Below, piece after piece: positions 25,718 to 26,985 of a DNA stretch of 64,000 bases. The position numbers were made by a program, and so were the translations under genes. Origin of the DNA: Octopus sinensis (Eukaryota); the NCBI RefSeq assembly GCF_006345805.1, contig NC_043006.1, forward strand, positions 9,796,001 to 9,860,000, given 5' to 3'. The number at the start of each line of letters is the position of its first letter. Position 1 is the stretch's first letter. The notes below the pieces were generated by a model. It did not search any database. It was given only the letters and a program-made list of their open reading frames with translations, and was not told the origin of the DNA.

Positions 25718-25917
25718 ATATATAAATTAATTTTATTTTATCGCATTCTGACTTTGTTTACATATTTCTCGATAAATTTTGAGCGTTAGACTATATACCA
25801 GAAATCCCTAGTTTGTCGGTTACGTTCTGAGTCTGCGCAGTGATCTGATTAGTTAGAAAGAGCAAATCAGTAGACGCACATGTTGCCTATCGGGTTGTGA
25901 TATAAGAATAACAGGAA

Positions 25918-25987
25918 TCTTACTGAAGAGCCAACCTGAGCAAATAAATATTTTTATTGCTGAAAAAGGCGAAACTGCAGTCTAAGA
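25918..25987 (+). ncRNA. Type-I hammerhead ribozyme, family 1, copy 1
   Basis: Stem I TCTTA/TAAGA; canonical CTGAAGA; stem II GCC...GGC with inner AGCAA.TAAA/TTTATTGCT hairpin; GAAA; stem III palindrome ACTGCAGT; GUC site ending 25982. Confidence 0.88.
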
Positions 25988-26316
25988 AGAACCGAGTTAG
26001 TAAAAGTTTTTATTTTCATTTCACTAAATTTATCAAGCTTCTGTGTTTCTAGTAAATACTTCGCCGCTTAATGTACTTATATATGAATAATATATGGCCT
26101 GTGCTAGAAACACCAGCGATAATAATTAATTTTATTTTATCGCATTCTGACTTTGTTTACATATTTCTCGATAAATTTTGAGCGTTAGACTATATACCAA
26201 AAATCCCTAGTTTGTCGGTTACGTTCTGAGTCTGCGCAGTGATCTGATTAGTTAGAAAGAGCAAATCAATAGACGCACATGTTGTCTATCGGGTTGTGAT
26301 TTAAGAATAACAGGAA

Positions 26317-26386
26317 TCTTACTGAAGAGCCTACCTGAGCAAATAAATATTTTTATTGCTGAAAAAGGCGAAACTGCAGTCTAAGA
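26317..26386 (+). ncRNA. Type-I hammerhead ribozyme, family 1, copy 2
   Basis: As copy 1, with stem II GCCT/AGGC; site ending 26381. Confidence 0.9.
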
Positions 26387-26715
26387 AGAACCGAGTTAGT
26401 AAAAGTTTTTATTTTCATTTCACTAAATTTATCAAGCTTCTGTGTTTCTAGTAAATACTTCGCCGCTTAATGTACTTATATATGAATAATATATGGCCTC
26501 TGCTAGAAACACCAGCGATAATAATTAATTTTATTTTATCGCATTCTGACTTTGTTTACATATTTCTCGATAAACTTTGAGCGTTAGACTATATACCAAA
26601 AATCCCTAGTTTGTCGGTTACGTTCTGAGTCTGCGCAGTGATCTGATTAGTTAGAAAGAGCAAATCAATAGACGCACATGTTGTCTATCGGGTTGTGATT
26701 TAAGAATAACAGGAA

Positions 26716-26785
26716 TCTTACTGAAGAGCCTACCTGAGCAAATAAATATTTTTATTGCTGAAAAAGGCGAAACTGCAGTCTAAGA
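26716..26785 (+). ncRNA. Type-I hammerhead ribozyme, family 1, copy 3
   Basis: Same motif as copy 2; site ending 26780. Confidence 0.9.
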
Positions 26786-26985
26786 AGAACCGAGTTAGTA
26801 AAAGTTTTTATTTTCATTTCACTAAATTTATCAAGCTTCTGTGTTTCCAGTACATACTTCGCCGCTTAATGACTTATATATGAATAATATATGGCCTGTG
26901 CTAGAAACACCAGCGATAATAATTAATTTTATTTTATCGCATTCTGACTGTATATATATATATATATATATAGATATATATATAT

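What the first reader, a model, noticed from the sequence alone, without database searches (positions are those of the whole stretch)
25724..26949. 3x399-bp tandem array with an intact canonical hammerhead in every unit: candidate octopus retrozyme
Seen: CTGAAGA, stem II, GAAA, palindromic ACTGCAGT and GUC with a 5-bp stem I at exact 399-nt spacing (sites 25982, 26381, 26780). Inter-unit differences are mostly substitutions that spare the core, and no long ORF is present. Known: animal non-LTR retrozymes are tandem repeats of a few hundred nt with minimal type-I HHRs that cleave as dimers and give circular RNAs, probably mobilised by Penelope-like elements. Inference: read-through RNA is cut into 399-nt monomers (25983-26381, 26382-26780) that circularise. 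I do not know this family to be described.
Basis: partly seen in the sequence, partly recalled or inferred. Interest (0 to 1): 0.93.

Follow-up and report, generated by a model that had tools for sequence, protein, structure and literature searches.

The report
Tandem hammerhead-ribozyme repeat (animal retrozyme)
A 399-bp sequence repeated three times in a row carries a complete self-cutting hammerhead RNA motif in every copy and has the anatomy of an animal "retrozyme", a known kind of small parasitic element thought to spread through circular RNA, so it is a real but fairly ordinary new example of that kind.

Summary
A 399-bp unit is repeated 3.07 times at 25725-26949 (98% identity). Every unit has a complete type-I hammerhead on the + strand, with cleavage predicted after C25982, C26381 and C26780. 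The motif is not chance: a strict descriptor finds only these three sites, against 0.007 hits per shuffled window. Rfam scores it 28-29 bits, below the 34-bit gathering score, because helix II carries a 28-nt insertion.

The array has no ORF, is 33% GC, and has no reverse transcriptase or GIY-YIG gene nearby. It meets every sequence-level criterion published for metazoan non-LTR retrozymes.

Its integration footprint fits Penelope-like-element machinery:
- (TA)n lies on both sides.
- The ends fall at unit positions 142 and 170, not at the ribozyme cut.
- A 29-nt terminal redundancy resembles the PLE "tail".

Helix III is a 2-bp stem with a palindromic tetraloop, as in newt and axolotl, so cleavage as a double hammerhead is plausible.

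Three things are not supported. Sparing of the core is not statistically meaningful with 10 differences. The circle is not unusually stable (z = -1.0). The host, given as "octopus", could not be verified. Expression, cleavage, circles and copy number are untested. Verdict: a new member of a known kind, of modest interest.

The parts
25666..25724 (.). Left (TA)30 microsatellite directly abutting the array; presumed part of the integration target
   Evidence: TRF; sequence
25725..26949 (+). Whole tandem array: 3.07 units of 399 bp, 33% GC, no ORF longer than 45 aa
25725..25982 (+). 5'-partial unit U0 (unit positions 142-399), carrying the first complete hammerhead
25983..26381 (+). Full unit U1 in cleavage register: predicted 399-nt monomer RNA
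26382..26780 (+). Full unit U2 in cleavage register: predicted 399-nt monomer RNA; 2 differences from U1
26781..26949 (+). 3'-partial unit U3 (unit positions 1-170, with one 1-nt deletion)
25917..25988 (+). Type-I hammerhead copy 1; cut predicted between C25982 and U25983. Helix II has 3 bp at its base (GCCA variant)
   Evidence: Rfam RF00163, 27.9 bits; descriptor
26316..26387 (+). Type-I hammerhead copy 2; cut predicted between C26381 and U26382
   Evidence: Rfam RF00163, 29.2 bits; descriptor
26715..26786 (+). Type-I hammerhead copy 3; cut predicted between C26780 and U26781
   Evidence: Rfam RF00163, 29.2 bits; descriptor
25725..25753 (+). 29-nt terminal redundancy, left copy (AATTAATTTTATTTTATCGCATTCTGACT); candidate PLE-type 'tail'
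   Evidence: Identical to 26921-26949
26921..26949 (+). 29-nt terminal redundancy, right copy; the array ends here, 170 nt downstream of a ribozyme cut site
26116..26143 (+). Stem-loop GCGAUAA...UUAUCGC (unit 134-161, -7.4 kcal/mol). It recurs at 26515-26542 and 26913-26940. Both array ends map in or just after this hairpin
26951..27036 (.). Right (TA)43 microsatellite directly abutting the array
   Evidence: TRF; sequence

Best explanation
This is a genomic copy of a metazoan non-LTR retrozyme. A retrozyme is a non-coding, non-autonomous retroelement made of head-to-tail 399-bp units, each carrying a type-I hammerhead ribozyme.

Proposed cycle, with each step marked:
1. The + strand is transcribed across several units. 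This is inferred. No promoter was identified, and internal T5 runs argue against Pol III.
2. Each hammerhead cuts after GUC, at 25982/25983, 26381/26382 and 26780/26781. The motif is shown; the activity is inferred.
3. Cutting most likely happens as a double hammerhead. Helix III alone is only A-U plus C-G with a UGCA tetraloop, but the 8-nt palindrome ACUGCAGU of two ribozymes can form one 8-bp helix.
4. [quoted passage not shown] This is by analogy with coral, mussel and axolotl retrozymes.
5. New DNA copies are made in trans by the reverse transcriptase/GIY-YIG endonuclease of a Penelope-like element (PLE). The enzyme would nick AT-rich or (TA)n DNA and start cDNA synthesis inside the RNA rather than at a ribozyme-made end, on a circular or multimeric template. 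This is inferred from the footprint at this locus:
   - (TA)n on both sides;
   - three whole units plus a 29-nt terminal redundancy;
   - ends at unit positions 142 and 170, in or next to a hairpin.
For: Tandem array of 399 bp x 3.07 at 98% identity.

Complete hammerhead core and three helices in every unit. The motif is found only here in the window and in about 0.7% of shuffled windows. No other ribozyme family and no minus-strand ribozyme was found.

The operational criteria of Li et al. 2026 are all met: TRF repeat, type-I HHR, RNAfold MFE below -5 and at least two consecutive complete units. The HHR MFE is -14.6 to -16.3.

The features listed by Cervera & de la Pena 2020 (PMC7229834) are met. 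The unit is within 150-450 bp, GC is 33%, there are no flanking LTR-like repeats and no ORF. Mussel retrozymes are 350-390 bp, close to this unit size.

No RT or GIY-YIG domain was found in ORFs from 17-36 kb; the only Pfam hit is a mariner fragment. There is no GIY...YIG motif anywhere in the window. The element is therefore non-autonomous.

Helix III is +2.9 kcal/mol as a hairpin and -11.1 kcal/mol as an intermolecular 8-bp duplex. The double-hammerhead estimate is -34.5 kcal/mol, against -32.6 for two inactive monomer folds. The newt/axolotl HHR has the same helix III design and needs dimers.

Integration footprint: (TA)30 on the left and (TA)43 on the right, while pure TA runs cover only 3.3% of the window. 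The 29-nt redundancy is identical at both ends. The ends fall at unit 142 and 170, beside the hairpin at unit 134-161.

Published PLE properties match this footprint. PLEs show a bias for AT-rich or (TA)n targets, a 30-40-bp tail, and internal RT initiation at two nearby sites in a stem-loop downstream of the HHR. Unprocessed multimeric RNA serves as the template (PMC8557442; PMC11167929).
Against: - Only one locus is available. No related copy could be retrieved from any collection, so mobility, copy number and covariation in the helices are untested.
- The Rfam score is below the gathering threshold, 29.2 against 34.
- In isolation the 72-nt ribozyme prefers an inactive fold. In that fold CUG of the core pairs with CAG of helix III: -16.3 against -10.4 kcal/mol.
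- In the full 399-nt circle, the hammerhead fold costs +12.1 kcal/mol relative to the MFE. The 3' strand is sequestered by unit positions 250-254.
- The circle is not more stable than shuffles (z = -1.0, 60% paired), so the 'highly self-paired' trait is not shown.
- The 41-nt helix II is atypical, and loop-loop tertiary contacts cannot be assessed.
- (TA)n tracts are very common in this window, so about 3-6% of random insertions would land in one.
- The 29-nt redundancy is just below the published 30-40 bp. It could also arise from unequal crossing-over.
- No PLE is present in the window, and the host genome is unidentified.
Confidence: 0.75

Rival explanations
1. The array is a decayed or local derivative of an autonomous Penelope-like element. 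A pseudo-LTR (pLTR) fragment carrying the PLE's own hammerhead was amplified on the spot by unequal crossing-over into a small satellite. It is not an independently mobile, circle-forming element, and the ribozyme may no longer act.
For: PLE pLTRs carry type-I/minimal HHRs, and retrozyme consensus sequences in Xenopus match PLE pLTRs. Satellite birth from PLE termini is discussed. The terminal units are more diverged than the two inner ones (0.5% against 1.2-2.3%), as expected for crossover homogenisation. The ribozyme fold is not the predicted ground state. Only a single locus was seen.
Against: No trace of RT or GIY-YIG coding sequence in the unit or within about 8 kb. The array is bounded cleanly by (TA)n and has an exact 29-nt terminal redundancy, which looks like one integration event rather than gradual local growth. 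All invariant ribozyme nucleotides are intact in all three copies. The published view treats such pLTR-derived tandem HHR repeats as retrozymes anyway, so this rival differs mainly on present activity.
Confidence: 0.17
2. An ordinary tandem duplication of unique sequence that contains a hammerhead-like string by chance.
For: The Rfam score is below the gathering threshold. The three motifs are copies of one motif. A looser 23-base version of the pattern hit one unrelated bacterial coding region among 241 million metagenome records.
Against: The strict descriptor gives 0.0067 hits per shuffled 64-kb window. The one real occurrence sits inside one of only three long-period arrays, which together cover about 5% of the window. 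The score shortfall is explained by the helix II insertion, not by core mismatches. The bacterial hit lacks a helix I.
Confidence: 0.03
3. A DNA copy of an autonomously replicating viroid-like or deltavirus-like circular RNA that became integrated as a multimer.
For: The multimeric head-to-tail structure, with ends unrelated to the ribozyme site, is what rolling-circle intermediates would give. The unit is small.
Against: No ribozyme of any Rfam family on the minus strand. No ORF. The predicted circle is not rod-like or unusually stable. No match in the viral contig collection.
Confidence: 0.03

Closest known systems
Metazoan non-LTR retrozymes (Cervera & de la Pena 2020, NAR, PMC7229834), especially the 350-390-bp Mytilus galloprovincialis family
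   Same: Short head-to-tail repeats of a few hundred bp, with one type-I hammerhead per unit. No LTR, PBS, PPT or ORF, and low GC. The unit size is almost the same as in the mussel. In some mussel circles the predicted global fold also does not leave the HHR free.
   Different: No sequence relation could be tested. Helix III is of the weak amphibian type rather than the more stable type described for most invertebrate retrozymes. Helix II is 41 nt instead of a short stem-loop. Expression and circles have not been shown here.
Newt satellite 2 / axolotl Rtz_331 (HHR_Amex1) hammerheads
   Same: Helix III is one extra base pair plus a palindromic tetraloop (ACGCGCGU in newt, ACUGCAGU here). It is predicted to be unstable alone and stable as an 8-bp intermolecular helix, hence cleavage as a double hammerhead. 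Unit sizes are 330-350 bp against 399 bp.
   Different: Different sequence. Long helix II. The conserved loop 1-loop 2 contacts of the amphibian motif are not recognisable. Copy number is unknown here, against about 1e5 in axolotl.
Penelope-like elements and their pseudo-LTRs (Craig et al. 2021, PMC8557442; Frangieh et al. 2024, PMC11167929)
   Same: A hammerhead in the repeated part, tandem arrangement, an AT-rich or (TA)n target, a short terminal 'tail' redundancy, and ends that lie in a hairpin downstream of the ribozyme rather than at its cut site.
   Different: No RT/GIY-YIG ORF and no inverted 5'-truncated copy. The tail is 29 nt rather than 30-40. The distance from the cut site to the ends is 142/170 nt, against about 85-120 nt in the Anolis element. 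The hairpin is AU-rich, not AC-rich.
Plant LTR retrozymes (Cervera et al. 2016, PMC4918200)
   Same: A non-autonomous element whose RNA is cut by hammerheads into a monomer that circularises and is thought to be the retrotransposition template.
   Different: Plant elements have type-III HHRs inside about 350-bp LTRs, with PBS, PPT and 4-bp TSDs, and are mobilised by Gypsy elements. None of these features is present here.

Membership tests
Metazoan non-LTR retrozyme | Head-to-tail tandem repeat with a unit of roughly 150-450 bp | tested here: met
   399 bp x 3.07, 98% identity
Metazoan non-LTR retrozyme | [quoted passage not shown] 2026 criteria) | tested here: met
   Three consecutive complete motifs; MFE -14.6 to -16.3 kcal/mol
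Metazoan non-LTR retrozyme | No LTRs and no coding capacity; GC below 50% | tested here: met
   Flanks are unrelated to each other and to the unit. Longest frame is 45 aa. GC is 33%. PBS and PPT were not searched for specifically.
Metazoan non-LTR retrozyme | Target-site duplication longer than 4 bp, when present | tested here: inconclusive
   Both junctions lie in (TA)n, so a duplication cannot be delimited.
Metazoan non-LTR retrozyme | Multi-copy, dispersed family in the genome (evidence of mobility) | not testable with these tools
   One locus in the window. No eukaryotic genome collection is available. Metagenome, viral, translated-peptide and exact-ORF look-ups found no relative.
Metazoan non-LTR retrozyme | Expressed as unit-length linear and circular RNA | not testable with these tools
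   No transcriptome data available.
Metazoan non-LTR retrozyme | Stable, highly self-paired predicted circle | tested here: inconclusive
   Circular MFE is -79.1 kcal/mol with 60% of bases paired, but z = -1.0 against dinucleotide shuffles.
Metazoan non-LTR retrozyme | Co-occurrence with HHR-bearing Penelope-like elements in the same genome | not testable with these tools
   None in the window and the host is unidentified. If the host is an octopus, 31 recently active PLE families are reported in O. vulgaris (PMC13282606).
Hammerhead ribozyme, type I (Rfam RF00163) | Invariant core C3-A9, G12-A14, A15.1-U16.1, H17, with G10.1-C11.1 | tested here: met
   CUGAAGA, GAAA and GUC are read directly and aligned by cmscan.
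Hammerhead ribozyme, type I (Rfam RF00163) | Three helices around the core, with helix I open | tested here: met
   Helix I is 5 bp. Helix II is 3-4 bp plus an extended hairpin. Helix III is 2 bp plus a tetraloop, or 8 bp as a dimer.
Hammerhead ribozyme, type I (Rfam RF00163) | Score at or above Rfam's gathering threshold (34 bits) | tested here: not met
   27.9-29.2 bits. The deficit coincides with a 28-nt insertion in the helix II loop, not with core mismatches.
Hammerhead ribozyme, type I (Rfam RF00163) | Site-specific self-cleavage | not testable with these tools
   Needs in vitro transcription. The thermodynamic ground state of both the 72-nt motif and the 399-nt circle is not the active fold.
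Autonomous Penelope-like element | Single ORF with a telomerase-like RT and a GIY-YIG endonuclease | tested here: not met
   Pfam scan of ORFs from 17-36 kb finds only a mariner fragment. There is no GIY...YIG motif in the window, and the only YADD belongs to an RTE LINE at 7843.
Autonomous Penelope-like element | Integration signature: AT-rich or microsatellite target, 30-40-bp tail, ends internal to the RNA | tested here: inconclusive
   (TA)n on both sides, a 29-nt redundancy, and ends at unit 142/170 beside a hairpin. This is suggestive, but it is a single locus and the tail is slightly short.
Plant LTR retrozyme | Type-III HHRs within LTRs, with PBS, PPT and a 4-bp TSD | tested here: not met
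   The hammerhead is type I and there are no LTRs.
Viroid-like / deltavirus-like RNA replicon | Ribozymes in both polarities, or a rod-like genome | tested here: not met
   No minus-strand ribozyme. Fold z = -1.0.

The most novel reading that the evidence does not exclude
The most novel reading is that this locus preserves a clean, young integration footprint showing how animal retrozymes are copied into DNA. The footprint is three exact units plus a 29-nt 'tail', both ends beside one hairpin 142-170 nt downstream of the cut site, inside a (TA)n tract. It would mean copying by Penelope-type target-primed reverse transcription that starts internally on a circular or multimeric RNA, not at ribozyme-made ends. 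If the same two end positions recur at other loci of the family, that would be the first direct genomic evidence for the PLE-retrozyme partnership in a mollusc. It would also define the RNA element (the hairpin) that recruits the PLE enzyme. In addition, the ribozyme would be a dimer-dependent variant in an invertebrate with an unusually long helix II.
Probability: 0.3. Interest if true: 0.45.

Novelty: new member of a known kind. Interest (0 to 1): 0.3.

Why it matters
Retrozymes are a natural, splicing-independent route to abundant small circular RNAs in animals, and their mode of mobilisation is still inferred rather than shown. In the papers searched, no retrozyme or hammerhead repeat is described for octopus or any other cephalopod. 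If the host attribution holds, this would extend the catalogue. The locus is young (0.5-2% divergence) and has sharp boundaries. That makes the hypothesis that Penelope-like elements integrate retrozyme RNA by internal initiation testable by simple genome-wide end-mapping. Beyond that, it is an expected kind of element in an invertebrate genome.

Tried and rejected
1. Rfam at gathering threshold over the window gave no hit. Only the E-value mode recovers the hammerheads. The many miRNA-family 'hits' lie on TA/TG/CA microsatellites and were dismissed as compositional.
2. I searched for relatives in five ways:
   - Exact-product look-ups of four window ORFs found nothing on record.
   - An HHR pattern scan of metagenome contigs gave one match, L001. 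It lies inside a bacterial coding region with no helix I and no tandem repeat, so it is a chance hit.
   - The same scan of viral contigs gave no match.
   - A concatenated six-frame peptide query of the unit against 5.8 billion proteins gave no hit.
   - The result is that no family alignment, covariation test or copy number was possible.
3. I tried to identify the host:
   - The RTE-type LINE fragment has best hits at 65-75% identity in mantis shrimp, Anolis, coral and unnamed metagenome proteins, with no octopus name.
   - A SINE + mariner + endonuclease-like query returned only mariner/SETMAR-like hits. One is named Octopus bimaculoides, at 68% identity over a quarter of the query.
   - There are no tRNA-like heads, and SINE strings were not found in the paper library.
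   - The host remains unverified.
4. Selection on the core, judged from inter-unit differences, was rejected as underpowered.
5. A 'rod-like, highly stable circle' is not supported (z = -1.0).
6. A paralogous empty site was sought. The left flank has a 93% direct repeat (24697-25142 and 25223-25665), but the sequence after the first copy is unrelated to the right flank, so it does not provide an empty site.
7. Six-frame DNA references cannot be given to the Pfam scan because of stop codons. The scan was redone with pasted stop-to-stop ORFs.
8. A nearest-neighbour energy for the double hammerhead cannot be computed directly, because it is pseudoknotted in dot-bracket notation. It was estimated by summing the parts.
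Full report
OBSERVATION

Tandem Repeats Finder reports one array at 25725-26949 with period 399, 3.1 copies, 98% matches and score 2380. BLASTN of one unit against the window shows two full units, 25983-26381 and 26382-26780, which are 99.5% identical. It also shows a 258-bp 5' partial unit (25725-25982, 98.1%) and a 169-bp 3' partial unit (26781-26949). There is no other copy on either strand of the 64-kb window.

Read directly, each unit contains UCUUA-CUGAAGA-[helix II]-GAAA-CUGCAG-UC, then the cut, then UAAGA. 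This is the full hammerhead core (C3-A9, G12-A14, A15.1, U16.1, H17 = C) with G10.1-C11.1 and a 5-bp open helix I. It is therefore a type-I hammerhead on the + strand.

Infernal against Rfam 15 matches RF00163 at 25917-25988, 26316-26387 and 26715-26786 with 27.9-29.2 bits. The E-value is 1e-4 for the 1.5-kb search and 4e-3 to 1e-2 for the whole window. The scores are under the 34-bit gathering threshold, so nothing appears at that threshold. The alignment shows the loss comes from a 28-nt insertion in the helix II loop, not from the core. No other ribozyme family and no minus-strand ribozyme was found.

IS IT MORE THAN CHANCE?

I used a strict descriptor: CUGANGA, at least 3 bp at the base of helix II, GAAA, the 15.1-16.1 and 15.2-16.2 pairs, UH, and 5 of 5 pairs in helix I. 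It finds only these three sites in the real window. In 300 dinucleotide-preserving shuffles of the whole window, both strands, it finds 0.0067 sites per window. The one real motif lies in one of three long-period arrays, which together occupy about 5% of the window. A looser 23-base version of the pattern found a single match among 241 million metagenome records. That match lies in a bacterial coding region without helix I or any repeat, which is a useful picture of what a chance hit looks like.

WHAT THE INTERNAL COMPARISON CAN AND CANNOT SAY

The array holds 9 substitutions and one 1-nt deletion. One substitution is in the ribozyme, at the fourth pair of helix II in the first copy, and none is in the core. 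With so few changes, about 0.9 would be expected in the roughly 35 constrained positions. 'Sparing the core' is true but carries no statistical weight. Pairwise divergence is 0.5% between the inner units and 1.2-2.3% for the outer ones, so the array is young.

ANATOMY AROUND THE RIBOZYME

- Coding capacity: the unit is 33% GC and has no frame longer than 45 aa.
- Helix II: it is 41 nt long and folds as GCC(U)/(A)GGC, an internal loop and an AU-rich hairpin, at -10.6 kcal/mol.
- Helix III: it is A-U plus C-G closed by the palindromic tetraloop UGCA. As a hairpin it is +2.9 kcal/mol. Two copies of ACUGCAGU form an 8-bp duplex of -11.1 kcal/mol, compared with -13.3 for the newt ACGCGCGU.
- Isolated motif: the 72-nt motif prefers an inactive fold in which CUG of the core pairs with CAG of helix III, at -16.3 against -10.4 kcal/mol for the single active fold.
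- Dimer: a double hammerhead is estimated at about -34.5 kcal/mol, against -32.6 for two inactive monomers. Cervera & de la Pena 2020 describe the same design for newt/axolotl HHR_Amex1, which cleaves poorly alone and well as a dimer. The dimer inference therefore fits this motif.
- Full circle: in the 399-nt circle the hammerhead fold costs +12.1 kcal/mol, because the 3' strand pairs with unit positions 250-254.
- Stability: the circle's MFE of -79.1 kcal/mol is not below that of shuffles (z = -1.0).

BOUNDARIES

The array is abutted by (TA)30 on the left (25666-25724) and, after one G, by (TA)43 on the right (26951-27036). Pure TA runs of at least 8 units cover 3.3% of the window.

The array is three whole units plus a 29-nt terminal redundancy. 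AATTAATTTTATTTTATCGCATTCTGACT occurs at 25725-25753 and identically at 26921-26949. The ends therefore lie at unit positions 142 and 170, counted from the cut site, and not at the ribozyme cut. They fall inside and 9 nt after a hairpin, GCGAUAA...UUAUCGC (unit 134-161, -7.4 kcal/mol). There is no inverted truncated copy and no LTR-like flank.

NEIGHBOURHOOD

- Pfam scans of non-low-complexity ORFs between 17 and 36 kb find only a mariner transposase fragment.
- Named fragments elsewhere in the window are mariner (21235-21486 minus strand, 34446-34769 plus strand), a possible CCHC knuckle, and an RTE-type LINE at about 7800-8640.
- There is no GIY...YIG motif or second RT motif in the window.
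- The array is therefore not part of an autonomous element.

COMPARISON WITH WHAT IS KNOWN

Metazoan non-LTR retrozymes are defined as follows. They are 150-450-bp tandem repeats with one type-I hammerhead per unit. They have no LTR, PBS or PPT, low GC, and longer TSDs when these are visible. [quoted passage not shown] Mussel units are 350-390 bp (PMC7229834). Li, Clavereau & Pollet 2026 use operational criteria, listed, that this array passes in full. They also show that vertebrate retrozymes are related to PLE pLTRs.

PLEs themselves show a bias for (TA)n or AT-rich targets, tandem insertions and a 30-40-bp 'tail' (PMC8557442). For an Anolis PLE in vitro, reverse transcription starts at two nearby internal sites in a stem-loop downstream of the hammerhead, the tail is the stretch between those sites, and unprocessed multimeric RNA is the template (PMC11167929). 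The footprint at this locus resembles that signature in four ways: the (TA)n flanks, the 29-nt redundancy, the ends at a hairpin, and ends that are not at the cut site. This is an inference from a single locus.

MECHANISM, WITH STATUS OF EACH STEP

- Shown: the tandem array; an intact hammerhead in every unit; no coding capacity; (TA)n flanks; the terminal redundancy.
- Inferred from the footprint: integration in trans by a PLE RT/endonuclease starting internally on a circular or multimeric template.
- I put 0.75 on the identification and general mechanism.
- I put about 0.5 on present-day catalytic activity of these particular copies.

RIVALS

- A pLTR-derived local satellite with a relic ribozyme (0.17).
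- A chance motif (0.03).
- An integrated viroid-like replicon (0.03).
- Each is set out with its evidence in the rival-explanations section.

HOST

The 'octopus' attribution could not be tested, because no eukaryotic nucleotide collection is available here. Protein searches with TE fragments gave no near-identical named hits. The one Octopus bimaculoides name is a 68% mariner match. Exact-ORF look-ups found nothing.

The window is 34% GC, very rich in microsatellites and SINE-like copies, and contains RTE and mariner fragments. That is compatible with published octopus repeat landscapes, in which Penelope-like elements are also recently active (PMC13282606). It is not diagnostic.

NOVELTY AND VERDICT

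The kind is known. No paper in the searched library describes a retrozyme or hammerhead repeat in octopus or another cephalopod. A match to a curated PLE pLTR could not be checked. I classify this as a new member of a known kind with interest 0.3. The only feature with wider value is the clean integration footprint, which makes the PLE-retrozyme link testable by genome-wide end-mapping.

Noticed in passing
window 23056-23465 (-), 32001-32281 (-), 32470-32876 (-), 33290-33700 (+), 44868-45160 (-), 45870-46266 (-); weaker at 13851-14000: At least six copies of a SINE-like element of about 410 bp, at 73-89% identity to the 33250-33700 copy. It starts GGCGTAGGAGTGACTGTGTGGTAAG... and has an internal TA/TG microsatellite. 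ARAGORN sees no tRNA-like head, and no protein or paper match was found.
   Followed up: partly
window 31748-32704: A second long-period tandem repeat: 469 bp x 2.0 at 99% identity. It is a duplicated block made of one SINE-like copy plus TA microsatellite. It has no ribozyme hit.
   Followed up: partly
window 24697-25142 and 25223-25665: The left flank of the array is itself a direct repeat, about 446 bp at 93% identity and 526 bp apart. Only the second copy runs into the (TA)30 tract and the hammerhead array. The first continues into unrelated sequence, so it does not serve as an empty site.
   Followed up: partly
window 27099-27392 and 27392-27720; related modules at 43576-43699, 43852-43948, 44185-44307, 44457-44582: Immediately right of the array lie two imperfect palindromic (foldback- or MITE-like) elements at 77-80% arm identity, each bounded by (TA)n tracts. 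Their arm module of about 120 bp recurs in a 271/334-bp tandem array at 43475-44582. The nature of these elements is unknown.
   Followed up: partly
window ~7800-8640 (+): Fragment of an RTE/BovB-type LINE. It has the YADD motif at 7843 and a 226-aa C-terminal frame. The best protein hits are 65-75% identical and come from very different animals (mantis shrimp, Anolis, coral), the patchy pattern typical of horizontally spread RTE elements. Pfam gave no hit for the C-terminal part.
   Followed up: partly
window 21235-21486 (-), 34446-34769 (+), 59269-59514 (+): Mariner/Tc1 transposase fragments: Transposase_1 at 3.8e-18 and HTH_48 at 2.8e-14. The closest named relatives are Hsmar1/SETMAR-like proteins. 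The third fragment was recognised by eye only and has no Pfam hit.
   Followed up: partly
window 38024-38311 (-) and 49966-50250 (-): Two further TE-like frames. One is a 96-aa frame resembling the C-terminal endonuclease-like region seen in some invertebrate retroelements, with no Pfam hit. The other has a CCHC zinc knuckle below the Pfam cut-off (17.4 against 20.8 bits).
   Followed up: no
window 22382-22704, 46269-46737, 47416-47773: Unusually long pure microsatellites: (ATA)47-(GAA)36-(GAT)17 in a row, (AT)240 and (ATT)120. About 30 separate (TA)n tracts occur across the window. These drive many spurious miRNA-family matches in the permissive Rfam search.
   Followed up: no
L001 227-291 (metagenome contig JAERMT010000353.1): The only database match to the relaxed hammerhead pattern lies inside a bacterial coding region and lacks helix I. 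It serves as an example of a chance hit, not as a relative.
   Followed up: yes
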